From IMG/VR virus record IMGVR_UViG_3300042540_001822, positions 1 to 64,000 of that record: a DNA stretch of 64,000 nucleotides. The stretch is one strand, 5' to 3'. Below, in pieces: positions 41,557-63,617 of the stretch. A program made the position numbers and the translations under genes. The first letter of the stretch is position 1, and the number at the start of each line of letters is the position of its first letter. A model generated the notes under the pieces. The model ran no database searches, was not told the origin of the DNA, and saw nothing but the letters and a program-made list of their open reading frames with translations.

Positions 41557-41794
41557 AAAAGAAGGGTTTAAAAGGTTAGTGATGTAAAGATAAGAAAACG
41601 GGACGAAAGAAAAAAATGGAACCCCAAAAAAATCTGGGATTAGTTATCTGAAATGAAGTTGTCCTTTCCCCGCTTATAGAGCTTGGCTGACGGCTTTGCT
41701 TTCGTGGTCATTTTCCTACGGACAATTTGGGCAATGTGCCTTAAGGATAGACCGTGTTGCCAGGTGGTGGTTTCTTTTTGCATGGTGTGGTTGG

Positions 41795-42079
41795 TTATTT
41801 CTTTTTAAATTGTTCAAACCATCTTTCACAATGTTCATTTTTCAAATCTAATTCTTGTACAGGACTTCCATATCCTATATTAAAACCAATTTTAAAAGCA
41901 CTTTTTAATTCTTTCTCACTATGCATTCTTTCAGCTTGCCATTTAGCACCTTCAATCCAAAAAAGGCGTTTAATGGTTATAATTCTATTTTCAGAATCAT
42001 CTTTTGTGAAAGGAAATAATCTTTCAGCTGCCTCTTCAATTGTTTCTTGTTTAGGTTCTTCTGCTGTTGGTATGTTCAT
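41795..42079 (-). CDS. hypothetical protein
   Basis: QETIEEAAE...GAKWQAERM motif common in Bacteroidota-phage small ORFs. Confidence 0.65.
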   Translation of the reverse strand: MNIPTAEEPKQETIEEAAERLFPFTKDDSENRIITIKRLFWIEGAKWQAERMHSEKELKSAFKIGFNIGYGSPVQELDLKNEHCERWFEQFKKK

Positions 42080-42080
42080 A

Positions 42081-42449
42081 TTATTTATTTTTAACTATTT
42101 CTATCAATTTAATTAAACAAGCAAGTTCTGCTTCTTCTTCCTTTCCACCTCCAATAATATAATTAAACATTATTGTATGATGTGGAAATACACCATACTT
42201 ATCTTTTAGATTATACTTCTCTCTAAACCATCTAAATGCTTGTGAGAATGTTGGGGCGGATATACAATCCCCAATACTACCATAATAAGATTCTTGGTTA
42301 GTTTTTGGTGTGAGTTTACCCCAGTCACAGATACAAGGTATCAATTTGGGTGCATAAGTCCATTGCATAAAACAAGGTTCATTAAACCCAAGTTCTTTGA
42401 GTTCTAAGGCTTGTTCGTAAGGAACGAATTCTTTTTCTAAGGAGTTCAT
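42081..42449 (-). CDS. hypothetical protein
   Basis: ALELKELGFNEPC...APTFSQAFRWFREK. Confidence 0.7.
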   Translation of the reverse strand: MNSLEKEFVPYEQALELKELGFNEPCFMQWTYAPKLIPCICDWGKLTPKTNQESYYGSIGDCISAPTFSQAFRWFREKYNLKDKYGVFPHHTIMFNYIIGGGKEEEAELACLIKLIEIVKNK

Positions 42450-42802
42450 AACAAGTTTTTTAAAGTGTATTCGATAGCAGCTTCATAGGCTTCTGTTGGT
42501 GAGTTAGATTCCCCAATTTTTCCTGATAAAACTGCCATATCTCCAAACTTATGTTGAATACACGGATGCCATATCTTACCATTTGTATAGACATAGCACC
42601 AATATTCATGTTTCTCATACAACCACATTATCACTTCCACAATGGTTGGTATTGAAACAGATTGTTTGGTTAAGTTGTAGTTACCTAATGGCGCGTTATC
42701 AATTTGTGTATTACTAATTAGATCATAAAAAGAAGTGCATTTTTTTTTAAAATCTTTCTCTTTTAGCAACTTGCCTAATTCAAAACTTACTGAGGTGTTC
42801 AT
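42446..42802 (-). CDS. hypothetical protein, distant relative of 42081
   Basis: VSFELGKLLKEK...PTIVEVIMWLYEKH...SPTEAYEAAIEY. Confidence 0.7.
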   Translation of the reverse strand: MNTSVSFELGKLLKEKDFKKKCTSFYDLISNTQIDNAPLGNYNLTKQSVSIPTIVEVIMWLYEKHEYWCYVYTNGKIWHPCIQHKFGDMAVLSGKIGESNSPTEAYEAAIEYTLKNLL

Positions 42803-42814
42803 TTCTTTTATGTT

Positions 42815-42967
42815 TTAATCGTGTAGTTTTGTCCATTTAAAGAATCCTATTAGATACATTAGTAACATTCCAATACTTGGTGCTTCTCTAATAATTTCAT
42901 TACCATTTAAGAAAATACAAACTAAAACACCTAACCAAAATGGGTAATACTTTTTTATTTTTTCCAT
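42815..42967 (-). CDS. small membrane protein
   Basis: Start set at MEKIKKYY; two hydrophobic segments. Confidence 0.5.
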   Translation of the reverse strand: MEKIKKYYPFWLGVLVCIFLNGNEIIREAPSIGMLLMYLIGFFKWTKLHD

Positions 42968-43038
42968 TTTATAAATAATTTTTGGTAATGTAAATATAAG
43001 AAAAGACTTGGAAAGAAAAACCGAATCCCCGTTTTTTT

Positions 43039-44004
43039 CTATTCTGGATATAAACGAGCAAGGGCGCGCATCTCTAGAGAATCCCCGTCCAAAATCTGTT
43101 TTTGAACCCTTTCTTCTGTCGGGAGTTCCTGAGGTTCCACGGTTGGCTCTGCCCAAATAATTTCCCCGCCATTTCTGAGGTCAAAGTAAAGCCTTTTCCC
43201 GATGGATCCTCTTCTGTTTTTTGTGAACTCTAAGAAGGTGATGGATTTGTCCTCCTCGTCAAATCTCATTTCCAGCATGCCGGTCGTGGCGTGCTTTAAA
43301 CGATTGGATCCAAGAAAAACTCCGTCTTTGGTCACCTGTTGGATACACAGAAACGTGGTAAACTTGGACTGGGGGTTTCCTCCCATGTTGTGTTTCTTCA
43401 TAAGATTCACTAACCACTTCTGAGCAACAACAGATGAAATTTTGAGGGACTCCTGAACATATTCTTGAACCTCTACAAAAGAATCAATTAGGACAACATC
43501 GAACCCGAGGTCTAAGGCCTGTTCGAGTATGGTTTGAGGATTGTGGTCTATGAACTCCCCTAAAAACAGAGTTTGCAAAGTTGAGAGTCGAGGGAATCTT
43601 TGAACGTATTTGGCTAGATCTACCCTCGTCATTTCCGCAGAGACGAACAGACATTTGGCACCTTGCTCTGTCAGTGAAGCTAGGGTGTCCATGCCAACAG
43701 TGGATTTGCCAACACCCGGGTCTCCAACAAGAATCCAGTTGGTGGCTTTGGGTACTCCACCCTCCGGGGTGAAAAGGAAATCAAGGGCTGTCTGCGTGAG
43801 GTGATTTTCCCACAGAGAATCTGGAAATGACATAGAACCTAAAGAAAGGATCTCTAGCGCCTTGGCTGGTTTGGGAGATAGGGCAACGTGAGGGCCCTTT
43901 GTATTTACCCGGGCCGCAGCGGCCTTCTTCACAGCCGCAGCTATGCGGGCTTTGGCTTCTTCGGACATTGGTCTGCGTTGTCCTGTGGTGGTTTTTCTAG
44001 GCAT
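43039..44004 (-). CDS. RadA/Sms-like RecA-superfamily ATPase
   Basis: Walker A GDPGVGKST, Walker B VVLIDS, QVTKDG, KNRRG. Confidence 0.8.
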   Translation of the reverse strand: MPRKTTTGQRRPMSEEAKARIAAAVKKAAAARVNTKGPHVALSPKPAKALEILSLGSMSFPDSLWENHLTQTALDFLFTPEGGVPKATNWILVGDPGVGKSTVGMDTLASLTEQGAKCLFVSAEMTRVDLAKYVQRFPRLSTLQTLFLGEFIDHNPQTILEQALDLGFDVVLIDSFVEVQEYVQESLKISSVVAQKWLVNLMKKHNMGGNPQSKFTTFLCIQQVTKDGVFLGSNRLKHATTGMLEMRFDEEDKSITFLEFTKNRRGSIGKRLYFDLRNGGEIIWAEPTVEPQELPTEERVQKQILDGDSLEMRALARLYPE

Positions 44005-44081
44005 GGTTTGGAATTGAAATTTGAAGTAAAAAAAACCACGGGCCGAGAGGAGTGCTGTCTCCTCCCAAGCCCGTGGAGTTG

Positions 44082-44582
44082 TTAGGCTGGCTGAGAATCC
44101 AACCGATTGAGTTCGGTTGGAATTGCTGGGGTGGTTGGGTTGGTGTTGGCGAAGCAGTCATCCCCAAGGCCCCTTTCGATAGATTGGGGATTGGTGAGGG
44201 GAAGGCCACACCGGCAACACCGACCTTCGTGAAGAAGGGAAATTCCCTTGGTGCGAAGAAGGTGTGGATGAGCAACAGCGTTGAGGACGAAGTTGAACAC
44301 CTGGGCGAGTTGGGAGTTGGGGAGAAGATTTTTTGCGGGTTTGTAGGTCATGGTGTCCTGGAAGATGGTCCCCGCAAAAACCATGCCTTGTTCCTTGTCA
44401 CCCAGAAGGGAAATGTTGACAAAGAAAATGGGGAGACGGACCTTGCGGTCTTTTTTGTCCCGGGCCTGCTTCACATGCACTGTGATGTGCTTTTCGGTCG
44501 CAGGGTTGAAGAAGGTGAGGACTGCACGACCTGCAAAGAAGAGGCGTGGGAGGGAGAGGGGGTTGACGTTGGAACGTATCAT
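44082..44582 (-). CDS. DUF6011-type Zn-finger protein
   Basis: CCRCGLPLTNPQSIERGLGDDC; start set at MIRSNV. Confidence 0.75.
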   Translation of the reverse strand: MIRSNVNPLSLPRLFFAGRAVLTFFNPATEKHITVHVKQARDKKDRKVRLPIFFVNISLLGDKEQGMVFAGTIFQDTMTYKPAKNLLPNSQLAQVFNFVLNAVAHPHLLRTKGISLLHEGRCCRCGLPLTNPQSIERGLGDDCFANTNPTTPAIPTELNRLDSQPA

Positions 44583-45070
44583 AGGTGGTTGGTTTATAAT
44601 GTAAAGATACGACATATCCCCGAGGATAAAAAATTAAACCCCGTTTTTTTCCAATTTATTTTTGGTCCAAAATTCCCCGGAGAAAACAAAGAATGCATAC
44701 GCATAAAACCCCGGGGTTTCCCATCCTGGCTTGGCCCAGCCTGGGCAGGCTGGGGCTCGGGCCTTGGCTGGGGATGGATAGGCCTTACCAGGCCAGGCTG
44801 GACCTGAGGTTAATAACCCGACGGTTTGATGTGTTTTATGGTTGGTTTCGTTCGGGGTTTTCGTGTGAAGTGGAAAGGGTATAAGAAGGTAGGATTAATT
44901 TAATGGAAAAAAACATACTCAAAACCTTTACTTTATGGAAAAAATGAATTGAAAATTGCCAATGATGATATTTTGGTGGAATAAAAAAGGCCCTCTTTTA
45001 TCGCGCGCTAAGAGTATGTTAGTGACATACTATGTTTTTGGGGGCCTTACCTATTTAAGCAAATAAGTTT

Positions 45071-45262
45071 TTACAAGGAATGATTATACCCATTAACCAA
45101 TCGTTCTGCAAATTCTTTATCCCTAGTTTTTAGGATAAGGTTTTTTGTTTGTTCTACATGCCCTCTGTGTATCTCATATTCTGTTGGAAATTTGCGTTCC
45201 AACAAAACAAGAGAATCTTTACCTTTAACAAATGCTTGACAGGAATCAGGGTTTGGTTTCAT
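45071..45262 (-). CDS. hypothetical protein
   Basis: ORF track. Confidence 0.55.
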   Translation of the reverse strand: MKPNPDSCQAFVKGKDSLVLLERKFPTEYEIHRGHVEQTKNLILKTRDKEFAERLVNGYNHSL

Positions 45263-45300
45263 GGGTTAGGTGTTACACGAATATACAAGTTATCGGAAAT

Positions 45301-45645
45301 TCATTTTTTTCCCGGATCAGTGTAAAAACAAAGTGTGTGGAATAAACCAAATGAAATTGATTTGAACTCTCTCGAAAAAATGTTGTAAGTGTTGAATAGT
45401 TCTTCAAACTCAAAATACATTTTATGTAGAATTTCATTTGCTTTTTCCCTTTCAATCTTACCTTTCTCTTGTTCAATTCTAACATCTAATGCGTTCCAAG
45501 CCAACGAATATACTCTTGCAATTAGTTTATCTGAAAATACCCCACACAACTGCATATTAGCCAGAAGTTTATTGTGTGCTTCGTAGTTTGGTTGAAGTTT
45601 TTTTAATTCTTTTGGTGGTTCACCAACTTGATAATCTAAGTTCAT
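45301..45645 (-). CDS. hypothetical protein
   Basis: Promoter at 45666; left end GTTATCGGAAATTCATTTTT identical to 33379. Confidence 0.65.
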   Translation of the reverse strand: MNLDYQVGEPPKELKKLQPNYEAHNKLLANMQLCGVFSDKLIARVYSLAWNALDVRIEQEKGKIEREKANEILHKMYFEFEELFNTYNIFSREFKSISFGLFHTLCFYTDPGKK

Positions 45646-45708
45646 ATGTTTAGTGTTTGTTTTTACAAATATACAAATAAATTTCTAAATTTTCAAATCT
45701 TATCTACA

Positions 45709-45948
45709 CTAATATACAAGTTGTAGGTAATGCCTTGAAAACCATTCCTCAAATTTCAATGCTTTGTCAGGAACATCTTTAATATCAGTATCCACACTTC
45801 TATTTTTGTATTGTTCCATATCAAACATTCTACCATTACTCCACGCCTTTCTAAGATGTTCCTTGAAAAAGGCACTACTCATAACAGCAGATATAAGCAA
45901 TTGCTCATCGCTGTTATTAAGTTTTTGTTGTTTATTATCATTCTTCAT
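45709..45948 (-). CDS. cassette-derived protein that starts inside the attC k loop
   Basis: Leader …EQLLISAVMSSA. Confidence 0.65.
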   Translation of the reverse strand: MKNDNKQQKLNNSDEQLLISAVMSSAFFKEHLRKAWSNGRMFDMEQYKNRSVDTDIKDVPDKALKFEEWFSRHYLQLVY

Positions 45949-46008
45949 ATTATCAAATTTTGTCTGTTAATTAAAAGAGCAACTGCTCATATCTGCAAAC
46001 CGTTTTAG
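45879..46008 (+). mobile_element. attC-like site k
   Basis: GCAGATATAAGCAATTGCTC/GAGCAACTGCTCATATCTGC, 18 of 20 pairs with two A.C mismatches; R' degenerate. Confidence 0.7.
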
Positions 46009-46021
46009 CTAATAAAATTTA

Positions 46022-46237
46022 CTACGCCTTTACCCATTTTTTACCATTGTGTTTTAATTCTACAACTTGTTTTAATTTCGTTTGTTCATCGTATGCTTCA
46101 ACATTACTACTGTCTAAAGGGTGTTCACCCCATCTGCTGTAAGTAAGTTGTTGTTCCCACAATTCTCTTGCCTGTTTTTCGTCCTTTGCCATTATTACAA
46201 CTTCTGCTTTAATAATGAATTTTTTAATTGTTTTCAT
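46022..46237 (-). CDS. hypothetical protein
   Basis: ORF track. Confidence 0.55.
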   Translation of the reverse strand: MKTIKKFIIKAEVVIMAKDEKQARELWEQQLTYSRWGEHPLDSSNVEAYDEQTKLKQVVELKHNGKKWVKA

Positions 46238-46278
46238 AATCCGTAAATTTTCAAATCTTACCTACACTAATATACAAG

Positions 46279-46656
46279 TTAGCGGTCAGCTTTAGACAGT
46301 TCACTTTTCAGCCACTCTTTACGCCAATTAAGACAGTAGTTAATGGCATCTTCAAGTTTCTTAAACTCTTTACTATGCGGTAATTCCATAAACATTGAAA
46401 TATCGTGAACATTACACACATCGTGTTTAGTTCTTGGACACACCCACCAATGAGTTTTTTTGTATTTAGTATAATCTTTGTTATCAGGTGGACAACCATC
46501 TAACCCACAAATAACATCAAAAGGCATAAAGATACCTTTCCAAACAACTTCCCAGCATCCACTACCTTCTGAATAGTTTTTGGGAGTTTTCAATGACCAA
46601 GCCGAACCGCTAACACGGGTTTGGCAAAATGGCTGTTCAGTAATTCTATTTGACAT
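46279..46656 (-). CDS. cassette-derived protein
   Basis: Leader …PFCQTRVSGSA; cassette 46278-46614. Confidence 0.65.
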   Translation of the reverse strand: MSNRITEQPFCQTRVSGSAWSLKTPKNYSEGSGCWEVVWKGIFMPFDVICGLDGCPPDNKDYTKYKKTHWWVCPRTKHDVCNVHDISMFMELPHSKEFKKLEDAINYCLNWRKEWLKSELSKADR

Positions 46657-46682
46657 ACCTATAACATAACAAGTGATATATG

Positions 46683-47183
46683 TTATTTGACTTCGTACAA
46701 GTGAAAGCAAATTACATATTCAAAGTCATCACCAAAATCTTCATCATCTAAATATTCACATTTAGGTTCTAACTTACCAATGTATTCACCCCATTTGTGC
46801 CAACGCCATCCCCCACCTTTGCCTTTATTTTCTTTATCTTGAAATACGGGTGTAACTGCAATAAAGTATTTCCTGTTGGGGTCTTCAATTTCTTCCTTAA
46901 AATACTCTTTTATTTGTTCAATACTATCACCAACACCATATTGTGCTTTAAGATAACTTGGAGCAAAAACTTCAAAACTTTGGTCAAATGGGATACTACC
47001 CATATCATCAAATTCTAAAAACTCTTCGTGAGAAAAATTAAATTCAATGTTACATTGGTAAACACCAATACCGAACTGCATCCATAATTCATCACACTGC
47101 GGGATGTATTCAAAATTGTGCTCTTTTGATATGGCACTTCTTCTTTCTATTTCTTTCCAATTTGGAGTTAAGTTTACTAACAT
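46683..47183 (-). CDS. hypothetical protein
   Basis: GGWRWHKWGEYIG motif. Confidence 0.7.
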   Translation of the reverse strand: MLVNLTPNWKEIERRSAISKEHNFEYIPQCDELWMQFGIGVYQCNIEFNFSHEEFLEFDDMGSIPFDQSFEVFAPSYLKAQYGVGDSIEQIKEYFKEEIEDPNRKYFIAVTPVFQDKENKGKGGGWRWHKWGEYIGKLEPKCEYLDDEDFGDDFEYVICFHLYEVK

Positions 47184-47239
47184 TTGTGTTTCAAATTAAA
47201 TTGTCTTATTGTCTAGAAAAAAGTTTTAAGTCTGGTGAT

Positions 47240-47767: not shown

Positions 47768-47791
47768 AATTTTTGTTTTGAAAAGTTTGAG

Positions 47792-48151
47792 TTATTGATT
47801 TTTTAATAAGGGATTTCCTAATGCAATACTTCTAAGTGCTAACATTGCGTTATTATACTGTTTTGCAGTCATTGTATTTTCATAGTCTCGAAATAAATAC
47901 TTCAAAACATATTTACATCTTTCTTCCAGTAAATCCTTTTCTTTGTCTAAATATTGTTTAGATCTGTTGTCTTCAATTACACCATTTGAATTCTCAAAGT
48001 AAATTTCCTCACCTTTAGAATCATATTCCCACTTTTCCCAATATCCACCTGAAATCTCAAAGTAAACTAGATTACCATTCGTGTCTTTAATTGCCAAGGA
48101 AGGATTGGCCTTAAAATCCCATTTGATTAGTTGTCCTACTGTTTGTTCCAT
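47792..48151 (-). CDS. dispersed member of the 21-aa repeat family, fused to a different C-terminus
   Basis: QLIKWDFK...YFEISGGYWEKWEYDSKG. Confidence 0.7.
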   Translation of the reverse strand: MEQTVGQLIKWDFKANPSLAIKDTNGNLVYFEISGGYWEKWEYDSKGEEIYFENSNGVIEDNRSKQYLDKEKDLLEERCKYVLKYLFRDYENTMTAKQYNNAMLALRSIALGNPLLKNQ

Positions 48152-48155
48152 GGTT

Positions 48156-48365
48156 TCACTTTTCTAAAACATACCGCATCATTTCTTGCATCTTGAGAAT
48201 CAAAACTTTCATTTCATCCTCATTAAGATACAACCTACTGTTAGGTGTTTTATCATCTAATTCTTTGGTTTCTATGATGATTCCATCGAACTCTTCCATG
48301 GGGTAAATTCCAACATTCTGGGATTCTGTTGAAATAATAGTTTTGATCCAAACTTTGTTAGCCAT
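48156..48365 (-). CDS. hypothetical protein
   Basis: ORF track. Confidence 0.6.
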   Translation of the reverse strand: MANKVWIKTIISTESQNVGIYPMEEFDGIIIETKELDDKTPNSRLYLNEDEMKVLILKMQEMMRYVLEK

Positions 48366-48420
48366 TCCGTGAAAATTGATGTTTTAGTTTATGGTGTAAA
48401 TATAGGATAAAAATGGAAAT

Positions 48421-48454
48421 AAAAAAAATGGAACCCCGGAAATTCCGGGGCTCC
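48421..48454 (-). terminator. intrinsic terminator overlapping the promoter upstream element
   Basis: GGAGCCCCGG-AATTT-CCGGGGTTCC followed by A and a T-run; similar structure near 48946-48977. Confidence 0.75.
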
Positions 48455-48895: not shown

Positions 48896-48984
48896 AAGTG
48901 GTTGGTTTTAGTTAATGATGTAAAGATAATCCAAAACTTAGAAAAATAAAAATGGAACCCCGGAAAATTGGGGCTCCATTTCAA

Positions 48985-49521
48985 TTAAACAACTGGACCA
49001 ACAAGTTCGGTTTTGGATTTCCGAATTTTGAGGATGGATTCAAAGGAGTAGGTTCGAATGATAACCTTGTCAATCAAACCACCTTGTTCTCCCTCTGTTT
49101 TTGTGGGTAAACCTTGGACTTCTTCTTTGGAAATTTCCACCCCATCCAAGAGGTAGGTTGATTGACCGCCTCTCAGGAAAATACACTCAAGATATTCCTT
49201 TCCTTTGTGGGTGATGAAAGGGGAGTTTGGGATCCTTTCTCCCCATGCCCTAGGTCCTGGCTCCCAACATCCATTGGGGGAATCTGTTGCAAGGATTTCA
49301 AACACTCTGTTGGCTTCATGTTGCTTTGAAAGCCTCCGGTTGACCATGTTGAAGTAACCTTTGCCATTTTTGAAAATCATCACCCTTGAATTGGTGGTAA
49401 GTTTGGTGACCCTTCCTTGTTGAGGATTGGATTTTCCCCCAAGCAAATCTACTTTGACGAGGGTATCAAGGCTGACGATTTGGCAACCTTTGAAAGAATT
49501 GATTTGAGATTTTTGAAACAT
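48985..49521 (-). CDS. hypothetical protein
   Basis: Start set at MFQKSQ; promoter at 49541. Confidence 0.7.
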   Translation of the reverse strand: MFQKSQINSFKGCQIVSLDTLVKVDLLGGKSNPQQGRVTKLTTNSRVMIFKNGKGYFNMVNRRLSKQHEANRVFEILATDSPNGCWEPGPRAWGERIPNSPFITHKGKEYLECIFLRGGQSTYLLDGVEISKEEVQGLPTKTEGEQGGLIDKVIIRTYSFESILKIRKSKTELVGPVV

Positions 49522-49619
49522 ATGTGGTTGGTTTATGTCGTAAAGATACGACATTTTTACTAAGAATAAAACCAAAACCCCGAAAAGTTTTTCCCCAATT
49601 TATGGGGCTAAGTAAATTG

Positions 49620-50000: not shown

Positions 50001-50098
50001 TAGTCAGGACAGGATTCGAACCTGCACACCTCAGTGTTTTATAGTTCATCAACTATGCGTTTCCCAAATGATATGTCTACCAATTTCGCCACCTGACT
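50001..50098 (-). ncRNA. AGTCAGG-family tRNA-like element 1
   Basis: AGTCAGG…GCAGGTTCGAATCCTGTCCTGACTA; Leu-type D loop; no canonical anticodon arm. Confidence 0.8.
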
Positions 50099-50201: not shown

Positions 50202-50333
50202 TAGTCAGGACAGGACTCGAACCTGTGCCTTGAGACTGACCCCTTGCTGACCTTTAGGTATCCACATCCTACCAGACTTGATGTGATATTTCTTTATCTG
50301 GGGAGCTGCTCTAACCAACTGAGCTACCTGACT
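50202..50333 (-). ncRNA. AGTCAGG-family tRNA-like element 2 (132 nt)
   Basis: Class-I D arm GCTCAGTTGGTTAGAGC; long insert. Confidence 0.8.
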
Positions 50334-51737: not shown

Positions 51738-51869
51738 TGTATTTATTTTATTAAGACAAATATACTATTGAAATGAGATTAGAAAAAATGAAACCCCAGG
51801 CCAAAAGACCTGGGGCTTGAAAGGGACCCAACCACAGATCCCTTTCGGGAGGGGGACTTTGGACTCCTA

Positions 51870-52220
51870 TTAGTCTTCCCCCTCCTGGTCCATTTCTTTT
51901 TTACGTTCAAGACCCCCAAACAAACCCCCCATCATTTTCTGAATTTCTTCTCGTTTGTTTTCGAATCCTGCGTGGATTTTTCCAACAAAATAACCTGCCA
52001 GAAGAAGTTTCTTTTCGTAACGTGTTAGGGAACCAGGAACATCCAGTTCCTCGGAACGAACAAAGTTACCACAGTCAAGAATGGTGTCAGAAACTGAATC
52101 ACATTTCTTAAAGGAATTCACACATTCCTTAGCCAATGAATCGAAACAGGAATCTGATAAACTGAGACCTCCGGAGATAGTTTTTGGGTAGAATGGTGCG
52201 TCATGCGGATGATTTGACAT
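51870..52220 (-). CDS. hypothetical protein, paralog of 41197
   Basis: MSNHPHDAP...TRYEKKLLLAGYF...MDQEGED. Confidence 0.75.
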   Translation of the reverse strand: MSNHPHDAPFYPKTISGGLSLSDSCFDSLAKECVNSFKKCDSVSDTILDCGNFVRSEELDVPGSLTRYEKKLLLAGYFVGKIHAGFENKREEIQKMMGGLFGGLERKKEMDQEGED

Positions 52221-52320
52221 AAAATAAGGGTTTAAAGGTTAATGATGTAAAGGTAAGATAAAATTTAGTGAAAAAAAAATGGAACCCCGATTTTATAAAA
52301 TAAATTTGAAATTGTTTTAG

Positions 52321-52407
52321 TAGTCAGGACAGGATTCGAACCTGTGTTCAGGGACTCAAAGTAAGTAACCCTCTGAGTTTGAATGGCAATCTTTTCGCCA
52401 CCTGACT
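52321..52407 (-). ncRNA. AGTCAGG-family tRNA-like element 5
   Basis: Long ACTCAGAG/CTTTGAGT hairpin replaces the anticodon arm. Confidence 0.8.
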
Positions 52408-53089: not shown

Positions 53090-53170
53090 TAGTCAGGGCA
53101 GGACTCGAACCTGCGGGAACTGTTTTGCCACGTAGGACTTATGTAGGCTCCACCATTTTGCCACCTGACT
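53090..53170 (-). ncRNA. AGTCAGG-family tRNA-like element 8 (81 nt)
   Basis: Perfect acceptor and T arm; non-canonical middle. Confidence 0.75.
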
Positions 53171-54340: not shown

Positions 54341-54436
54341 TAGTCAGGACAGGAATCGAACCTGTGAGTATAGGATTAGCGCTTAGCCTATACACATCTT
54401 ATTTCTAGAGTGCGTCTACCACTCCGCCACCTGACC
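54341..54436 (-). ncRNA. AGTCAGG-family tRNA-like element 10
   Basis: Leu-type D arm, 7-bp GTATAGG/CCTATAC variable arm, collapsed anticodon stem. Confidence 0.8.
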
Positions 54437-55178: not shown

Positions 55179-55274
55179 ACTTTGTTTTTGTTTTGTGAAA
55201 GCAAATTTATGTAAAGAATCGAAATTAAAAAAATTAAACCTCTGTTTTTAAACCGGAAAATTTCAAAAATGTTT

Positions 55275-55475: not shown

Positions 55476-55918
55476 TTGATTTCTCCTTTTCTGAAGTAAA
55501 ATGGGTTTTCCATTCCAGGTGATTTTTTGATTTTGTCCAACATGTGATTGTTGAATTCAATTGCAGATTCAAATTCTGGAACATTCAATTTTTCTGATTC
55601 CACCCATTCGAAGGGTAGAACCATCATTCTGGTTGCCAGTTGGGTTTTTTCCCAGAATTTGGTGACAACATTTTCCTGCTTTGAAAAACCATCAGCTGGA
55701 GAATTGAGGTAGGCATGAAGCTGAGATGGATTGTTGGGTTTGATGATTGCAAACATTCCTTTCATAACTCCATACATAGATTCATGAACCAAACCAACCA
55801 AAACCTTGTCTCCATTCTTGGCAAGTTCTCCAAGAAGCAATTCGATAGGGGTTGGTTGATAGGTTTGACCTGAATTGTCGTTGACAATTACTGTTTGTGG
55901 TTTTTGGTTTTTGTTCAT
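55472..55918 (-). CDS. hypothetical protein
   Basis: Promoter at 55941. Confidence 0.65.
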   Translation of the reverse strand: MNKNQKPQTVIVNDNSGQTYQPTPIELLLGELAKNGDKVLVGLVHESMYGVMKGMFAIIKPNNPSQLHAYLNSPADGFSKQENVVTKFWEKTQLATRMMVLPFEWVESEKLNVPEFESAIEFNNHMLDKIKKSPGMENPFYFRKGEIK

Positions 55919-55988
55919 AAGTGGTTGTTTTTAGTAAAAGCAAATGTACAATAATTCTTAGAAAAGTAAAAATGAAACCTCATTTTTT

Positions 55989-57051: not shown

Positions 57052-57053
57052 TT

Positions 57054-57943: not shown

Positions 57944-57967
57944 GGGTTTGTGATTTGGAAATTAAAG

Positions 57968-58321
57968 TTAAAGTGAATATGACGATTCTTGGTTGGCAAA
58001 ATAACCAACCTCCTGTAATTCTGTGATTGCTGCCTGGTCCCATTTATCGGGAAGACCAGATTCGATTTTCAACATCCACTCAACGTGCTCCTCTTTGTCC
58101 TCATCATAAACAAGGGCCAGGTCAAGATAAGTGCCAAAGTCGTGGGGACAATGTAAGGTTTTGAATCGTGCTCCTTCGGGAGGAACACCATGAATTCGAA
58201 GTAACTGCCGGGTAAATGCCTGGACTTCTTGTCTTGCCCTGGTGGAATAATTTTCAGAGCCAATTTGGGCACATTCCTCTTCGTGAGGAACTGTGGTTGC
58301 TAATTCTAGAGTTTCTAACAT
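57968..58321 (-). CDS. conserved phage hypothetical protein
   Basis: TVPHEEECAQIG...PHDFGTY...LPDKWD. Confidence 0.75.
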   Translation of the reverse strand: MLETLELATTVPHEEECAQIGSENYSTRARQEVQAFTRQLLRIHGVPPEGARFKTLHCPHDFGTYLDLALVYDEDKEEHVEWMLKIESGLPDKWDQAAITELQEVGYFANQESSYSL

Positions 58322-58418
58322 GTGTGTGTTTTTATGAAGGTAAATGTACAAATAAACTGGGAAACAAAAAAACGAAACCCTACAAAACTAGGGATTTTTA
58401 ATCAATATTTTAAGAACA

Positions 58419-59126
58419 TTAATTAATAATAAATTTACTGAAATTACTGAATGATGTTTCAAAGTATTCATCTTCAAAGTATTTATTTGAATATTCATTT
58501 TTTTCATATGGAACATAAAATCTAACATCTTCATTTTCCATTTTTCTTATAGGAAAAATATAAGTTGTATTATGTACATATTTTGGATAATTTAATTCAT
58601 TTTGTATTAGGTCCAAAAATAAGGTTTCTTCATATTCTTCATAATATGATCCTAATTCTACTGTTAGTTGTGTTTTTAAATCTAGATTAGTCTTTATATT
58701 TTTAAGTTTATTATATTCAGTTTCTTCAAAAATATAACCATACATAGTTTTAAATTCTCTCCAATTATACATTATTTCCTTATATTCATAATTACCATTC
58801 CATTTTTCAACTAATATAACATAATATCTAATATCTTTGTAAATTAAAACTTTAGTTTGGATTGATATAAAATTTTGTTCATTATTTTTAGACATCATAT
58901 AAGAACCTTGTAAATTACTCCAAGTTTCTTTCCATTTTTTATCTTCACAAATAACATTCTTATAATCAATCCATTCTCCAATTGTATGGTTATAAGACCA
59001 ACCAATTGATGATGTTAATTGAAAGGAAGAGTCAATAAATTTCAATTTTTGTCTATTAACCCTATCTTGAGCTAAAGTTAATAACGAAAGAAAAATAAAA
59101 AAAATTGTTAAAATTTTGTGTTTCAT
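58419..59126 (-). CDS. exported protein with a signal peptide
   Basis: MKHKILTIFFIFLSLLTLAQ. Confidence 0.7.
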   Translation of the reverse strand: MKHKILTIFFIFLSLLTLAQDRVNRQKLKFIDSSFQLTSSIGWSYNHTIGEWIDYKNVICEDKKWKETWSNLQGSYMMSKNNEQNFISIQTKVLIYKDIRYYVILVEKWNGNYEYKEIMYNWREFKTMYGYIFEETEYNKLKNIKTNLDLKTQLTVELGSYYEEYEETLFLDLIQNELNYPKYVHNTTYIFPIRKMENEDVRFYVPYEKNEYSNKYFEDEYFETSFSNFSKFIIN

Positions 59127-59155
59127 GAATTCTCGTTTTTTTAAAATCCCTTTTT

Positions 59156-59371
59156 TTACATGTCTCTTTCTTCTAGAAAAGCTTGAATTTCTTCCACCAA
59201 AGCTGGATCCTCAATGGAAAAACCATCTTTGTCTCTTAACTGAAAATCTATGACCTTTCCTTTTTCATTCAACCATTCCTTATAGATAAGCTTTCCTTTA
59301 GAATCTTGAAGGATGAAGGTTTCTTCAGTAATAGGACCTGAAGTGTCGTGATTCAAAATTTCAAATCTCAT
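59156..59371 (-). CDS. hypothetical protein
   Basis: Promoter at 59393. Confidence 0.65.
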   Translation of the reverse strand: MRFEILNHDTSGPITEETFILQDSKGKLIYKEWLNEKGKVIDFQLRDKDGFSIEDPALVEEIQAFLEERDM

Positions 59372-59435
59372 GAGTGTGTGTTTTTATGAAGGTAAATGTA
59401 CAAATAAACTGGGAATCAAAAAAACGAAACCCCGT

Positions 59436-59747
59436 TTATAATTTTACAAGTTTAAATTTTTCACCACCAATTACGATTTCTTTATCTTCACAAGGTTTAG
59501 GCCGATTATCTATGATTTTACCTTTTGAATCCTCGTAGTAGATTCTATTACCTTGAGAATCCCACTCCTGCTTTGACCAATATCCATTTGAATTCTCAAA
59601 GTAGATTAATTTACCTTGAGAATTCCATTCCTTCTTTGCCCAAAATCCACCTGAACCCTCAAAGTAGATTTCTTTGCCATTCTTGTCTAGTATTGCCAAG
59701 TTTCCATTGGTCTTGAAGTCCCATTTGATTTGTTGTGCTATTGTCAT
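59436..59747 (-). CDS. 21-aa repeat family paralog 1 (2 full units)
   Basis: MTIAQQIKWDF...GEKFKLVKL. Confidence 0.8.
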   Translation of the reverse strand: MTIAQQIKWDFKTNGNLAILDKNGKEIYFEGSGGFWAKKEWNSQGKLIYFENSNGYWSKQEWDSQGNRIYYEDSKGKIIDNRPKPCEDKEIVIGGEKFKLVKL

Positions 59748-59992
59748 ACTTTTACAAGTTTAAATTTTTCACCACCGATTACAATCTCTTTACCTTCACA
59801 GGGTTTGGGTCGTTTGTCTATGATGTAACCATCTGAATCCTCATAGTAAATTCTATTACCTTGAGAATTGTATTCACGCTTTGTCCAACCTCCATTTGAA
59901 TTCTCCCAGTAGATTACTTTACCATTCTTGTCTTTGACTACCAATTCACCATTGGTCTTAAAATCCCATTTGATTTGTTGTGCAATTGTCAT
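59744..59992 (-). CDS. 21-aa repeat family paralog 2 (1 full unit)
   Basis: ATGA-coupled to its neighbours. Confidence 0.8.
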   Translation of the reverse strand: MTIAQQIKWDFKTNGELVVKDKNGKVIYWENSNGGWTKREYNSQGNRIYYEDSDGYIIDKRPKPCEGKEIVIGGEKFKLVKV

Positions 59993-60303
59993 ACTTTCAC
60001 GAGTTTAAATTTTTCACCACCAAATTCTACAATCTTACCTTCACAGGTTTTAGGTCGGTTGTCTATGATTAGACCATCTGAATCCCCAAAGTAGATTTGA
60101 TTACCTTTAGAATCGTATTCACACTTTTCCCAATCCCCATGTGAATTCTCCCAGTAGATTAATCTACCTTGAGAATCGTATTCATACTTTACCCAAAGTC
60201 CAGTTGAATCCTCAGAGTAGATTACTCTACCATTCTTGTCTTGGATATCCAAGGAACCATTGGTCTCAAAATCCCATTTGATTTGTTGTGCGATTGTTTT
60301 TAT
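59989..60303 (-). CDS. 21-aa repeat family paralog 3 (2 full units; ATA in place of ATG)
   Basis: In-frame (I)KTIAQQIKWDFETNG upstream of the track start. Confidence 0.7.
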   Translation of the reverse strand: MKTIAQQIKWDFETNGSLDIQDKNGRVIYSEDSTGLWVKYEYDSQGRLIYWENSHGDWEKCEYDSKGNQIYFGDSDGLIIDNRPKTCEGKIVEFGGEKFKLVKV

Positions 60304-60674
60304 ACTTTTACAAGTTTAAATTTTTCACCACCGATTAGGATTTCTTTACCTTCACAGGGTTTGGGTCGTTTGTCTATAATTCCACCATTTGAATTCTCGT
60401 AGTAGAGTTCATTGCCTTGAGAATCCCGTTCATACTTTGCCCAATCACCATTTGAATTCTCTATGTAGATTCTATTTCCTTTGGAATCCAGTTCCCTCTT
60501 TACCCAAAATCCACCTGAATTTTCATAGTAGATTTCATTTCCTTGGGAATCGTATTCTCGTTTTGCCCAATCCCCAAATGAATTCTCCCAGTAGATTCTA
60601 TTACCATTCTTGTCTTTGATTGTCAATTTACCATTGGTCTTGAAATCCCATTTGATTTGTTGTGCTATTGTCAT
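60300..60674 (-). CDS. 21-aa repeat family paralog 4 (3 full units)
   Basis: ATGA-coupled. Confidence 0.8.
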   Translation of the reverse strand: MTIAQQIKWDFKTNGKLTIKDKNGNRIYWENSFGDWAKREYDSQGNEIYYENSGGFWVKRELDSKGNRIYIENSNGDWAKYERDSQGNELYYENSNGGIIDKRPKPCEGKEILIGGEKFKLVKV

Positions 60675-60985
60675 ACTTTCACAAGTTTAAATTTTTCACC
60701 ACCAAATTCTACTATCTTACCTTCGCAAGACTTGGGTCGTTTGTCTTTAATTAGACCATCTGAATTCTCAAAGTAGATTTGATTGCCTCCAGAATCGTAT
60801 TCATACTTTGCCCAAAATCCATCTGAATTCTCAAAGTAGATTACTTTTCCTCGAGAATCGTATTCACGCTTTAACCAATACCCAGTTGAATCCTCAGAGT
60901 AGATTGGGTTACCATTCTTGTCTTTGATTTCCAAGGGGCCATTGGTGAAATCCCATTTGATTTGTTGTCCTATTGTTTGGTTCAT
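60671..60985 (-). CDS. 21-aa repeat family paralog 5 (2 full units)
   Basis: Start MNQTIGQQ; promoter at 61005. Confidence 0.8.
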   Translation of the reverse strand: MNQTIGQQIKWDFTNGPLEIKDKNGNPIYSEDSTGYWLKREYDSRGKVIYFENSDGFWAKYEYDSGGNQIYFENSDGLIKDKRPKSCEGKIVEFGGEKFKLVKV

Positions 60986-61088
60986 TTTCGGATTTTTACA
61001 AAGGTAAATGTAAGAATAAAAGGGGAAACAAAAAAACGAAACACACAAAAAGTCTTGAATTTAACTTCATCAAAAATTGGATTGTTTT

Positions 61089-61511
61089 TTACATATCAAT
61101 AGAGAAACAATGGTTCCAATCATCTTTTGATGGATTTTCAGAATAAAACCATGAACCATTACGGAAAAGAAAAATATTAATTGGTCTAAATAAGTCACAA
61201 TAAAACAAAAATTCATTCATGTTTTCGAAAACCTTGGCTTCTGTTCCAGTTTCTCCCTTATCTCTTTTATATGCAACTGTAATACCTACAGCGGGATTTT
61301 CAAAATCGTGTGATTGACCTTGTTCAGGAGACAATTTCTTCTCAAGATAAGATAAATCTCCTAACCCCAAAATTTGAGATGCTGCAAGTAATGAGTTGTA
61401 GTGGGTGTGAAGCATGTGACCCAATGCTTCTGTCTGACCAAATTTAGAACAGTATATCGCCTCAATAGTTCCATTTGGCATTTCAACACCTATAACTGAA
61501 TGGTTTTGCAT
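61089..61511 (-). CDS. conserved phage hypothetical protein
   Basis: IYC...G...LGHML..HY...LGDLSYL...AYKRDKGE. Confidence 0.75.
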   Translation of the reverse strand: MQNHSVIGVEMPNGTIEAIYCSKFGQTEALGHMLHTHYNSLLAASQILGLGDLSYLEKKLSPEQGQSHDFENPAVGITVAYKRDKGETGTEAKVFENMNEFLFYCDLFRPINIFLFRNGSWFYSENPSKDDWNHCFSIDM

Positions 61512-61575
61512 AATTATATTTTATTAATGAGCCAAATGTAGAAAACAAAATTGGATCAAAAAAATTAAACCCCAC

Positions 61576-61601
61576 AAAAAACCCGGTTTGAAGACCGGGT
61601 T
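61576..61601 (-). terminator. intrinsic terminator (identical copy at 62618-62643)
   Basis: AACCCGGTC-TTCA-AACCGGGTT followed by a T-run. Confidence 0.85.
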
Positions 61602-61615
61602 ATTTTGGATTGGAT

Positions 61616-62122
61616 TTAAACAACTTTGAAAATCAATGTTATTCTTGGATTCATAAACATTCCAGATCCAGATACAACTGCTTTACAGTGATTTAAGAAT
61701 TCTGGTGTGTATTTTCTCTTATCCGGGTCTTCTAAAACCTCTTCACATTGATCTTTTTCAATCTCTGGATTTTCATTAAAGTTATTTATAAAATCTTCCA
61801 ATTCCCTTTTGAAATCCTCTGGTGAGATTGAAGGATCTGCTGCAAATATTACCATTCCATTATCACGTTGACTAAGATTCATACCATTTTGGTCACCCCC
61901 AATTATTTCTTCAACACCTTGTTCAAGGTCTAATGTTTCGCCAGGGGTTGAACCTTCTAAATCACGCAGTTTTTGAGAGGGATTAGTGTGATAGGTTACC
62001 ATATAAGTGTTAGGTTGTGTCCAATCAATGGGGGAACCGTCTTTTGTGAGTTTTGAAAAATCACCAGTTGCTGTGATAATTGGATTGGTTCCAAAATTTT
62101 CGAATAATTTAATGTGTTTCAT
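61616..62122 (-). CDS. hypothetical protein with CTS-like N-terminus
   Basis: MKHIKLFENF; GATATATA at 62139-62146. Confidence 0.75.
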   Translation of the reverse strand: MKHIKLFENFGTNPIITATGDFSKLTKDGSPIDWTQPNTYMVTYHTNPSQKLRDLEGSTPGETLDLEQGVEEIIGGDQNGMNLSQRDNGMVIFAADPSISPEDFKRELEDFINNFNENPEIEKDQCEEVLEDPDKRKYTPEFLNHCKAVVSGSGMFMNPRITLIFKVV

Positions 62123-62176
62123 TTTTTTGTTTTTTTTTTATATATCTAAATGTGAGGAAGAATTTTTGGTTGGTTT

Positions 62177-62551
62177 CTATTTCAGATTCTTGGCAATAAC
62201 TTCCCATTGATTTAAAATCTCTTCCATCATATTTGTGCCATTTTTCAAAATTGCGTAGTAGCATTCTTCATATCTCAGTTCCTCAAGATTCTCCTCCAAT
62301 TCACTCACAGATTTAACCAAACCATGTGAAAGATTTTCCAAAAAATTTTCCCAATTTCTTTCAATGGGTGCATTGTTGTAGGATTTCACTTGTTCTAGGG
62401 TTTTCTGCCATACAGATTCTTCTGCTTCTTGCAAAGTTAGAAAAGTTCCAACCGGATCTTTCTCACCCCTATATAAATTGTAGTACATAACAAGGAATGG
62501 TCCTGAATTAGATGAAGCCCCAAAATTTTCGAATAATTCTACGTGTTTCAT
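62177..62551 (-). CDS. hypothetical protein with CTS-like N-terminus
   Basis: MKHVELFENF; GATATATA at 62567-62574. Confidence 0.75.
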   Translation of the reverse strand: MKHVELFENFGASSNSGPFLVMYYNLYRGEKDPVGTFLTLQEAEESVWQKTLEQVKSYNNAPIERNWENFLENLSHGLVKSVSELEENLEELRYEECYYAILKNGTNMMEEILNQWEVIAKNLK

Positions 62552-62736
62552 TTTTTATTTTTTTTTTATATATCTAAATGTAAGAAAAAATTTTGGAGCA
62601 AAAAAACCAAACCCCACAAAAAACCCGGTTTGAAGACCGGGTTCTTAATTTTTGTATTTTAAAGTTTTGTTTTTTAATTTAAGTTCTCGTTAGCACTGCG
62701 TATATACGCAAAACGTTATAAGTAATAAAACAAAAA

Positions 62737-63153
62737 TTATGAGTTTATTATATTAATTAACGATTTCTTACAATTTTCAATAACTTCATTTGAGACATAT
62801 TCATCTTTGTATGTTTTTAATTCGTCCAGGTAGAATTTTGATAATTCTTTTAACCCTTCATCCGAAGTTAGAAATCTATAACCGATCCTTCCAAGTTCAT
62901 AATCAAAATCATTATCACCCTGATTTATTTTAATAAACTTAATTAAGAAATCTTTATCAAAATTACCTTCATTTGGTTTTACTTTATATCGTTGAACTCC
63001 ACCATATAATCCTTCGTATATGGATTCAAATAAATCATGAATTCCCATCATACCTGTAAAAAAATCAATAATAATATTATTATAATTCATACTTTCTTGT
63101 TTTAGTTGTTCGTTAATAAACTGACTTAGAGTTCTTTTAATATTCTTTTTCAT
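62737..63153 (-). CDS. hypothetical protein with CTS-like N-terminus and cassette-type NS* tail
   Basis: LSQFINE; followed by GTTATAAGTAAT at 62715 and an attC-like half-site. Confidence 0.65.
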   Translation of the reverse strand: MKKNIKRTLSQFINEQLKQESMNYNNIIIDFFTGMMGIHDLFESIYEGLYGGVQRYKVKPNEGNFDKDFLIKFIKINQGDNDFDYELGRIGYRFLTSDEGLKELSKFYLDELKTYKDEYVSNEVIENCKKSLINIINS

Positions 63154-63186
63154 ATTTATTATTTTTATATGTATAGTTTTAATTTT

Positions 63187-63534
63187 TTACCCACCCACTT
63201 TTGAAATAGATGTTTTAGTTGCCCCACATTTAAAACCATCATCAAAAATCAAATTTACCATAGCACTATCATTTTTACCTCGTTCTACCCAAGTTACAGT
63301 TGCTATATCACCAGATAATGCCTTATCATATAACCCATCATGTTGTCCAGCCATATGTATTTCTCTTTTAAAATGTTTGCCTAACGCTTTTTTCATCATT
63401 TTTTCGTAGCTTTCCATTTGATTTTTAATGATTTCAGGATTGACTAAAACCTTATCACCTTTTTTAAAATCAGTAGTTATTTCTTCATTCAAGAATTGTT
63501 GCCAGTTCTTTACTTTGTTTATTTGTTCTCCCAT
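63187..63534 (-). CDS. hypothetical protein with CTS-like N-terminus
   Basis: KVKNWQQFLNEE. Confidence 0.7.
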   Translation of the reverse strand: MGEQINKVKNWQQFLNEEITTDFKKGDKVLVNPEIIKNQMESYEKMMKKALGKHFKREIHMAGQHDGLYDKALSGDIATVTWVERGKNDSAMVNLIFDDGFKCGATKTSISKVGG

Positions 63535-63617
63535 TTTTTGCTATTATTTTTATTTTTTATGTATCTAAATGTAATTAAGAATTTTTGACCAAAAAAATCA
63601 AACCCCATTTTTACAAT

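What the first reader, a model, noticed from the sequence alone, without database searches (positions are those of the whole stretch)
41585..63606. Promoter class with a fixed-distance GGGGTT element (MotA-box-like logic)
Fourteen promoters have a -7 box TAnnTTT(A/G) exactly 24 nt from a 9-mer of type GGGGTTCCA/GGGGTTTAA/GGGTTTCG, with a T-tract where the -33 TTTG normally lies. They occur only from 41.5 kb onward, whereas cassette-region promoters use canonical TTTG. In some copies the 9-mer is also the 3' arm of the upstream terminator. This suggests a phage activator redirecting host RNA polymerase, or a strong UP-like element.
Basis: partly seen in the sequence, partly recalled or inferred. 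Interest (0 to 1): 0.65.

Follow-up and report, generated by a model that had tools for sequence, protein, structure and literature searches.

The report
Phage promoter family with T-tract and GGGGTT
A jumbo phage of Bacteroidota-type bacteria carries 15 near-identical promoters in which a run of seven T's replaces the usual -33 signal and a GGGGTT block sits just upstream. The T-run design recurs in other giant phages, and most likely marks strong early promoters read by the host enzyme rather than an activator-dependent (T4 MotA-like) class.

Summary
GGGGTT-N27-TAnnTTT occurs 11 times in the window against 0.16 expected. A weight matrix finds 15 strong members in the 219-kb phage genome, 14 of them in the window. 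All lie on the minus strand between 41.6 and 65.4 kb, in intergenic DNA, and 14 stand 18-31 nt before an ORF start.

The conserved blocks are GGGGTT (-45..-40), T7 (-36..-30) and the Bacteroidota -7 box. The spacer is not conserved.

The interpretation needs revision. The core element is T7-N17-(-7 box). It recurs massively in distant giant phages (54 copies in one 373-kb genome) and occurs in a sigma-less Cellulophaga phage. GGGGTT is an accessory specific to this lineage.

The phage encodes an RpoD-like sigma and no RNA polymerase, MotA or AsiA. In relatives from 33% to 92% identity, the sigma gene itself sits behind a T7-class promoter. The sigma's DNA-reading residues differ from host sigma-A and vary between phages that share the T7 design. 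A separate GATATATA motif (48 of 50 copies non-coding, just before ATGs) fits the phage sigma better.

Best reading: an early class read by host polymerase. A MotA-like or sigma-dependent mechanism is not excluded. No transcript data could be obtained.

The parts
41585..41625 (-). Class-B promoter: GGGGTTCCA, T7, N17, TATCTTTA. ATG at 41556 (119-aa ORF).
44602..44642 (-). Class-B promoter: GGGGTTTAA. ATG at 44582 (166-aa ORF).
48397..48437 (-). Class-B promoter: GGGGTTCCA. The 9-mer is the 3' arm of the terminator hairpin at 48454-48430. ATG at 48365.
48921..48961 (-). Class-B promoter: GGGGTTCCA. The 9-mer is the 3' arm of the hairpin at 48982-48949. It drives a 144-aa protein with an N-terminal winged-HTH match.
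49541..49581 (-). Class-B promoter: GGGGTTTTG, with a weaker T-tract. ATG at 49521.
51757..51797 (-). Class-B promoter: GGGGTTTCA. The 9-mer is the 3' arm of the hairpin at 51818-51791. It is followed by an ORF-poor stretch with tRNA-like genes, not by an ORF.
52248..52288 (-). Class-B promoter: GGGGTTCCA, no hairpin. ATG at 52220. The downstream ORF is a paralogue of the gene behind 41625, but the spacers differ.
55941..55981 (-). Class-B promoter, variant 9-mer GAGGTTTCA. ATG at 55918.
58341..58381 (-). Class-B promoter, variant AGGGTTTCG. Near-duplicate of 59433.
59393..59433 (-). Class-B promoter: GGGGTTTCG, no hairpin. Highest matrix score.
61005..61045 (-). Class-B promoter, variant TGTGTTTCG.
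61533..61573 (-). Class-B promoter: GGGGTTTAA. A separate terminator (61601-61580) lies directly upstream.
62575..62615 (-). Class-B promoter: GGGGTTTGG. A separate terminator lies directly upstream, and the -7 box is followed at once by GATATATA.
63566..63606 (-). Class-B promoter: GGGGTTTGA, no hairpin. ATG at 63534.
55202..55242 (-). Weak class-B-like site: GAGGTTTAA, T7, N17, TAAATTTG. Matrix score 14.
45666..45697 (-). Class-A promoter with canonical TTTG-N20-TATATTTG, lying inside the class-B zone. Five more are at 26805, 31850, 32238, 33313 and 34210.

Best explanation
The fifteen sites are promoters of one class in a T4-like jumbo phage that has no RNA polymerase of its own.

Architecture (relative to a start site taken 5 nt after the box):
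- GGGGTTynr at -45..-37
- a run of about seven T at -36..-30, exactly where the Bacteroidota -33 TTTG would lie
- a 17-nt unconserved spacer
- the Bacteroidota -7 box TAynTTT(A/G) at -12..-5
- an ATG 14-27 nt after the start site

Core and accessory: the functional core is the T-tract plus the -7 box at fixed distance, a design shared with distant giant phages. GGGGTT is an accessory upstream module specific to this lineage.

Most likely mechanism: the class is read directly by host core polymerase with host sigma-A, as a strong early class that expresses small host-takeover genes, tRNA-like genes and, in relatives, the phage sigma itself. The phage sigma then redirects the polymerase to the -10-only GATATATA promoters in front of structural and replication genes, in the place of T4 gp55.

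Dual use: in several copies the G-block plus T-run also ends the upstream transcript as an intrinsic terminator, so one compact module stops one unit and starts the next.

Shown: the motif, its statistics, positions, block-wise conservation, occurrence in relatives, and gene content.
Inferred: which holoenzyme reads the class, its timing, and what GGGGTT contacts.
For: Motif and statistics.

Position: every copy is intergenic and sense to the next gene. Fourteen of 15 have an ATG 18-31 nt after the box. This matches the 24-nt median 5'UTR and the -12..-5 box position mapped in Flavobacterium (PMC9723704).

Block-wise conservation: mean pairwise identity is 0.91 for GGGGTT, 0.87 for T7 and 0.82 for the box, against 0.44 for the spacer and 0.31 upstream. 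Only one triplet of copies is a recent duplicate.

Gene content: the downstream genes are almost all small ORFans. The genome has no T7-like or beta-subunit polymerase domain.

T7-N17-box in other phages:
- 54 copies at spacing 17 against 0-10 at other spacings in a 373-kb phage whose sigma is 42% identical.
- 121 at spacing 17 against 6-26 at other spacings over 80 sigma loci.
- Present in a lineage with a quite different sigma (L198).
- Present in sigma-less Cellulophaga phage phi38:1, before tRNA clusters.

The sigma gene lies 62-128 nt behind such a promoter in 10 of 11 distant relatives. The sigma operon does so in relatives of 92, 77, 70 and 53% identity, with GGGGTT at 70 and 53%.

Sigma residues: the phage sigma's -10 and -35 reading residues differ from a Flavobacteriales sigma-A. 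Its region 4.2 helix varies widely among phages that share the T7 design.

GATATATA: 48 of 50 copies are non-coding and 41 have an ATG within 3-25 nt. It is also the top sense 8-mer upstream of ORFs in the 373-kb phage and is rare in three sigma-less phages.

Literature: T4-like jumbo phages without a polymerase are reported to carry a minimal or an RpoD-like sigma (PMC7824862).

Bacterial example: a terminator-promoter junction of the same design precedes a methyltransferase gene in three MAGs.
Against: - No transcript ends or timing data exist.
- The class lacks the TTG of the host -33 element, and 11 of 15 boxes end in A rather than the canonical G.
- The same genome also has canonical TTTG promoters, which suggests two recognition modes.
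- T7-N17-box is not enriched in five Bacteroidota genomes. That test has low power, because the canonical pattern was barely enriched either.
- Co-occurrence of T7 promoters, GATATATA and the sigma is confounded by shared ancestry.
- phi38:1 contributes only one independent case (three near-identical copies).
- The host is unknown.
Confidence: 0.5

Rival explanations
1. Activator-dependent middle class. A phage protein made from the canonical class-A promoters binds GGGGTTynr at -45..-37 and recruits host polymerase to promoters that lack a -33 TTG.
For: - GGGGTT is held at 0.91 identity at a fixed distance, even in copies without any hairpin.
- It is kept at the orthologous sigma-operon promoter in relatives of 70% and 53% sigma identity.
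- Canonical and T-tract classes coexist in one genome.
- The full pattern is found only 37 times, always singly, in 185,579 species genomes.
- A small winged-HTH protein is encoded behind one of these promoters.
Against: - No MotA C-terminal domain or AsiA is detectable.
- The cross-lineage constant is the T-tract, not GGGGTT. Other lineages have AT-rich or GAATCA blocks there.
- GGGGTT is absent from the sigma-operon promoter of this phage and of its 92% and 77% relatives, which keep T7-N17-box.
- Giant relatives have practically no canonical TTTG class from which an activator could first be made.
Confidence: 0.17
2. The class is read by the phage's own RpoD-like sigma. Its divergent region 4 recognises the T-tract and GGGGTT, and the sigma gene is positively autoregulated.
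For: - The phage encodes a full sigma with regions 1.2, 2, 3 and 4.
- Its region 4.2 helix differs from the canonical one of host sigma-A.
- T7 promoters are abundant in sigma-bearing giant phages and not enriched in bacterial genomes.
Against: - The -7 box is the host type, while the sigma's region 2.4 residues differ from host sigma-A.
- Region 4.2 is not conserved among phages that share the identical T7-N17 design.
- The design occurs with an unrelated sigma type and in a phage with no sigma.
- A sigma whose only visible promoter needs that sigma leaves no way to start the cascade.
Confidence: 0.15
3. GGGGTT has no promoter role. It is the leftover or working 3' arm of intrinsic terminators whose U-tract happens to double as the T-tract, and it spread with the promoter cassettes.
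For: - In bacterial genomes the same 15-mer is nearly always the 3' half of a terminator.
- Three copies here are strong terminators and two are weak ones.
- Giant relatives also show hairpins ending in the T-tract.
Against: - Seven to nine copies have no complementary 5' arm, yet keep GGGGTT.
- Three copies have a complete separate terminator immediately upstream and still carry GGGGTT.
- Spacers have diverged while GGGGTT has not.
Confidence: 0.1

Closest known systems
Bacteroidota sigma-A promoters (-33 TTTG / -7 TAnnTTTG)
   Same: Same -7 box at the same inferred position. Same distance from the box to the -33 register: TTTG-N20 in class A equals T7-N17 in class B. Same short 5'UTR.
   Different: The G of TTTG is replaced by more T's. 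Eleven of 15 boxes end in A. There is an extra G-rich block one helical turn upstream.
Phage T4 middle promoters (MotA box with AsiA sigma appropriation)
   Same: A host-type downstream element is kept, the upstream host element is replaced, and a conserved box sits at a fixed distance. The phage has T4-like replication genes.
   Different: - The MotA box sits at about -30, in place of -35. Here the T-tract holds that place and GGGGTT lies further upstream.
- No MotA or AsiA homologue was found.
- The sigma gene lies downstream of this class.
Phage T4 early promoters and PeSL (promoter-early stem-loop) cassettes of T4-type phages (from my own knowledge, not checked here)
   Same: Many closely spaced, highly similar promoters, each before one to four small ORFans. 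They are often joined to a stem-loop or terminator, and their conservation extends beyond the host consensus.
   Different: Different host phylum and consensus. Recombination at these modules was not tested.
T4 late promoters (TATAAATA, gp55) and the RpoD-like sigmas of group-2 jumbo phages (PMC7824862)
   Same: The genome's GATATATA motif is -10-only and lies just before genes. The phage has no polymerase of its own and carries an RpoD-like sigma.
   Different: This concerns the companion class, not class B. The sigma-to-motif link is inferred only.
UP elements (alpha-CTD sites at -40 to -60)
   Same: GGGGTT lies in the register of the proximal subsite. The function could be factor-independent.
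   Different: UP elements are A/T-rich, whereas this block is G-rich. The A/T-rich part lies at -36..-30.

Membership tests
Bacteroidota sigma-A promoter | -7 box TAnnTTTG at about -12..-5 | tested here: met
   All 15 copies have TAnnTTT. The last base is A in 11 and G in 4. The box position is taken from PMC9723704.
Bacteroidota sigma-A promoter | -33 TTG/TTTG about 19-21 nt upstream of the box | tested here: not met
   A T-run fills the register. TTTG appears only 4 nt out of register in six copies. Class A in the same genome does have TTTG-N20.
Bacteroidota sigma-A promoter | Intergenic, sense to the downstream gene, short leader | tested here: met
   Fourteen of 15 copies have an ATG 18-31 nt after the box.
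T4 MotA-dependent middle promoter | Activator box replacing the -35 element at a fixed distance from the -10 element | tested here: inconclusive
   The fixed distance is met. However, the -35 register is held by the T-tract, and GGGGTT lies at -45..-40.
T4 MotA-dependent middle promoter | MotA activator and AsiA co-activator encoded by the phage | tested here: not met
   No match to MotCF (PF09158) or AsiA (PF09010) even at E=10. The record is 88% complete, and distant analogues would be missed.
T4 MotA-dependent middle promoter | Expression after, and dependent on, early protein synthesis | not testable with these tools
No isolate or host is known.
UP element | A/T-rich block at -40..-60 that stimulates transcription without extra factors | tested here: not met
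   The block at -45..-40 is GGGGTT. Stimulation could not be tested.
Intrinsic terminator | G+C-rich hairpin followed by a U-tract | tested here: inconclusive
   Met in 48437, 48961 and 51797, weakly in 41625 and 49581, and not in the rest.
T7-N17-(-7 box) promoter design of giant Bacteroidota-type phages (defined here) | Seven T's exactly 17 nt before TAnnTTT(G/A), many copies per genome, before small genes | tested here: met
   Own genome. Relatives.

The most novel reading that the evidence does not exclude
GGGGTTynr is the binding site of an unrecognised phage-encoded factor, or of the divergent region 4 / C-terminal tail of the phage's RpoD-like sigma. That factor re-targets Bacteroidota RNA polymerase to promoters lacking a -33 element. 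It would be a functional analogue of T4 sigma appropriation, evolved independently in phages of a phylum whose promoter rules differ from those of E. coli.
Probability: 0.2. Interest if true: 0.7.

Novelty: new variant of a known kind. Interest (0 to 1): 0.45.

Why it matters
Transcription programmes of Bacteroidota phages are almost unexplored, and the phylum's promoters follow their own rules. This work yields three things.
- A precise, testable promoter grammar, T7-N17-(-7 box), shared by giant uncultivated phages, with a lineage-specific GGGGTT add-on.
- A candidate early-to-late cascade: host polymerase first, then a phage RpoD-like sigma acting at GATATATA.
- Compact terminator-plus-promoter modules that could serve as strong, portable expression parts for flavobacteria and Bacteroides.

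If GGGGTT proves to be a factor-binding site, it would be a new case of polymerase redirection.

Tried and rejected
- Scanning IMG/VR for the motif: a loose pattern gave over 116 single chance hits and a strict one gave 3 singletons. No multi-copy relative was visible there.
- Close sigma relatives in IMG/VR by exact peptides: none. Relatives above 50% identity exist only on 1-5.5-kb metagenome contigs.
- Host-genome enrichment test: T7-N17-box equals its control in five Bacteroidota genomes. The canonical TTTG-N20 positive control was barely enriched either, so this test has little power and I lean on it only for density.
- Hunt for a gp55-like late sigma next to the gp47-like exonuclease: nothing found in ten neighbouring ORFs. 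The rest of the genome was not scanned for it.
- Consistent inverted repeats flanking the T-tract: seen by eye in a few copies only (alignments), no dedicated test run; dropped.
- Literature on Bacteroidota phage promoters and on phi38:1 transcription: nothing on this motif.
- Sigma-70-type consensus scan: fewer hits than in shuffles, as expected for this phylum.
Full report
WHAT THE WINDOW IS. The window is the first 64 kb of a single 219,475-bp IMG/VR virus record. The record is linear, estimated 88% complete, and has 36% G+C. Only a 43-nt stretch matches any isolated phage at the DNA level.

Gene content places it among T4-like jumbo phages. It has a topoisomerase II large subunit about 30% identical to those of T4-type phages, class I ribonucleotide reductase, family-B DNA polymerase pieces, a helicase and a gp47-like exonuclease. 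No single-subunit polymerase domain and no beta-subunit domain is detectable.

From 24 to 74 kb nearly all genes are small, lie on the minus strand and have no family match.

THE OBSERVATION. On the minus strand, GGGGTT-N27-TAnnTTT occurs 11 times in the window against 0.16 expected. Genome-wide, spacing 27 gives 12 hits and all other spacings give 0-3.

A weight matrix separates 15 members (scores 32-54) from a background of 17 or less. Fourteen are in the window and one lies at 65405. All lie between 41.6 and 65.4 kb.

- Each is intergenic and points at the next gene. Fourteen have an ATG 18-31 nt after the box, opening an ORF of 69-178 aa. The fifteenth (51797) faces an ORF-poor stretch with tRNA-like genes.
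- Mean pairwise identity is 0.91 for GGGGTT, 0.87 for the T-run and 0.82 for the box. It is 0.44 for the 17-nt spacer and 0.31 upstream.
- Only 58381, 59433 and 61045 look like recent duplicates.

This block pattern indicates selection on the three blocks, not recent copying. With the -7 box at -12..-5, as mapped in Flavobacterium psychrophilum (PMC9723704), GGGGTT lies at -45..-40 and the T-run at -36..-30.

TERMINATORS. The 9-mer plus T-run is the 3' half of a strong hairpin terminator in 48437, 48961 and 51797, and of a weak one in 41625 and 49581. Three copies (61573, 62615, 65405) have a complete terminator immediately upstream and still carry GGGGTT. The remainder have no partner arm. 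Terminator function therefore explains some copies but not the conservation.

OTHER PROMOTER CLASSES IN THE GENOME.
- Class A is a 45-nt module with canonical TTTG-N20-TATATTTG. It occurs at 26805, 31850, 32238, 33313, 34210, 45697 and 69748.
- GATATATA occurs 50 times. Forty-eight copies lie in the 15% of the genome that is non-coding, and 41 have an ATG 3-25 nt downstream. It is found on both strands, before structural-region and replication genes, with no conserved upstream element. It resembles the -10-only late promoters of T4.

THE PHAGE SIGMA. At 71822-72706 (minus strand, outside the window) the phage encodes a 294-aa sigma with regions 1.2, 2 and 4 matching Pfam. NCBIfam and PDB matches to RpoD/SigA/RpoS span residues 20-287. 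It is 29% identical to the primary sigma of a Flavobacteriales MAG.

It differs from that host-type sigma at the residues that read DNA in sigma-70. Region 2.4 reads W-H-I-R-K-E against W-W-I-R-Q-S. The region 4.2 helix reads S-K-Q-K-A-E-I-I against T-R-E-R-V-R-Q-I. No MotA DNA-binding domain or AsiA is found.

RELATIVES. Sigma homologues above 50% identity occur only on short metagenome contigs. Homologues of 30-42% occur in many phages of 100-500 kb.

In a complete 373-kb phage (sigma 42% identical), seven T's lie exactly 17 nt before TAnnTTT(G/A) 54 times, against 0-10 at other spacings. The consensus has AT-rich flanks upstream and ATCYG downstream of the T-run. Most copies lie before small genes on one strand at 41-100 kb. 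Of 95 intergenic boxes near ORF starts there, 50 are of this type and one is canonical.

Over 80 sigma-bearing loci (1.45 Mb), spacing 17 gives 121 hits against 6-26 at other spacings, concentrated in the closest clade. A further lineage has the same design with GAATCA in place of GGGGTT, and its sigma has canonical-like region 2.4.

The shared core is therefore T7-N17-box, and the block upstream of the T-run is specific to each lineage. The region 4.2 helix varies widely among phages that share the design.

THE SIGMA GENE LIES BEHIND THIS CLASS. In 10 of 11 distant relatives, a T7-class promoter lies 62-128 nt before the sigma ATG, and likewise in the 44% relative.

In relatives of 70% identity (five metagenomes) and 53% identity, the small gene that precedes sigma is headed by a full class-B promoter including GGGGTT, at the same spacing. 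In this phage and its 92% and 77% relatives, the orthologous promoter keeps T7-N17 and an imperfect box but has lost GGGGTT.

Two conclusions follow. GGGGTT is conserved yet dispensable. And the class precedes sigma in the regulatory cascade, unless sigma is autoregulated.

CONTROLS.
- The full class-B pattern occurs 37 times, never twice in one stretch, in one genome each of 185,579 species. Most of these hits are terminator 3' halves.
- Three orthologous Bacteroidota MAG loci show terminator, T-run, 17 nt, then TATCTTTG before a homocysteine methyltransferase gene in ordinary chromosomal context.
- T7-N17-box is at control level in five Bacteroidota genomes. The canonical pattern was barely above control too, so only the density contrast is informative: about 5 per Mb in bacteria against about 145 per Mb in the 373-kb phage.
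- Among five isolated Bacteroidota phages without any sigma domain, Cellulophaga phage phi38:1 has three near-identical T7-N16/17-box promoters before tRNA clusters. Tenacibaculum phage PTm1 has a T-run ending in the canonical TTTG.
- GATATATA is the top sense 8-mer upstream of ORFs in the 373-kb phage, at 62 against 6 expected. It is three to six times rarer per kb in the sigma-less phages PTm1 and phi38:1 than in the 373-kb phage, and about 1.5 times rarer in phi14:2.

INTERPRETATION. I favour an early class read by host sigma-A holoenzyme, for five reasons.
- The box is the host's.
- The design is constant while phage sigmas vary.
- It occurs without a phage sigma.
- It drives the sigma gene.
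- In giant relatives it is the only abundant host-like class from which infection could start.

The phage sigma, with conserved but non-host region 2.4, fits the shared GATATATA motif. This agrees with the report that T4-like jumbo phages without a polymerase carry either a minimal or an RpoD-like sigma (PMC7824862). A Bacteroides phage promoter is known to be very strong in uninfected cells (10.1101/2025.03.18.644028), so factor-independent strength has precedent.

What GGGGTT contacts is unknown. Candidates are alpha-CTD, a host factor, a phage factor, or DNA shape next to the T-run. The MotA-like reading, the sigma-dependent reading and the pure terminator-remnant reading remain possible at lower odds.

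LIMITS. The host is unknown, no transcript data could be obtained, ORF calls are my own simple ones, and the comparisons across phages are not phylogenetically independent.

Noticed in passing
window 50001-50098, 50202-50333, 52321-52407, 53090-53170, 54341-54436 (minus strand): tRNA-like genes above Rfam's gathering score in which the anticodon arm carries or is replaced by an insert (76 nt in one). ARAGORN sees them only in intron mode. They lie in an ORF-poor stretch, 49.6-54.7 kb, behind class-B promoters.
   Followed up: partly
window 40386-40697 and 40660-41200: About 13 tandem copies of a 24-nt unit (12-nt sub-period), followed by a G+C-rich 0.5-kb non-coding stretch with several GGGG/CCCC blocks. 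It could be an origin, a packaging site or a structured RNA.
   Followed up: no
whole genome; in the window at 3457, 6708, 13037, 13048, 14998, 21011, 25969, 62146, 62574, 63947: GATATATA, a -10-only late-type motif. Forty-eight of 50 copies are non-coding and usually lie 3-25 nt before an ATG, which implies very short or absent leaders. The motif is shared with giant relatives.
   Followed up: partly
G000 71822-72706 (outside the window; L001:991-1875): The phage encodes a 294-aa RpoD-like sigma factor. Its promoter-reading residues differ from those of host-type sigma-A.
   Followed up: yes
window 26774-26805, 31819-31850, 32207-32238, 33282-33313, 34179-34210, 45666-45697: Class-A promoters. 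These are nearly identical modules of about 45 nt with canonical TTTG-N20-TATATTTG, and their spacer is conserved too.
   Followed up: partly
G000 74009-74607 (L204:10009-10607): A 599-nt non-coding stretch at the point where transcription diverges, holding 4-5 copies of AGTCCTTTAAAGAATCC with flanking repeats.
   Followed up: no
G000 about 73050-73190, and L268, L273, L283, L285: A conserved ORF of about 45 aa, very rich in basic residues, just upstream of the sigma-operon promoter in this phage and its relatives.
   Followed up: no
window 59436-60252; G000 138-151 kb, 77-83 kb, 112-114 kb, 192.8 kb: Two expanded gene families. Their members share termini and adjoining promoter motifs, which suggests cassette duplication.
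   Followed up: no
L237, L238, L240 (Bacteroidota MAG contigs): A chromosomal terminator whose GGGGTTTTG arm and T-run lie 17 nt before a -7 box, in front of a homocysteine methyltransferase gene. The arrangement is conserved in three genomes.
   Followed up: partly
window 338-2276: Two adjacent HNH endonuclease paralogues. Elsewhere, the DNA polymerase matches are spread over three separate ORFs (G000 116321-117538, 181894-183048, 202484-203887).
   Followed up: no
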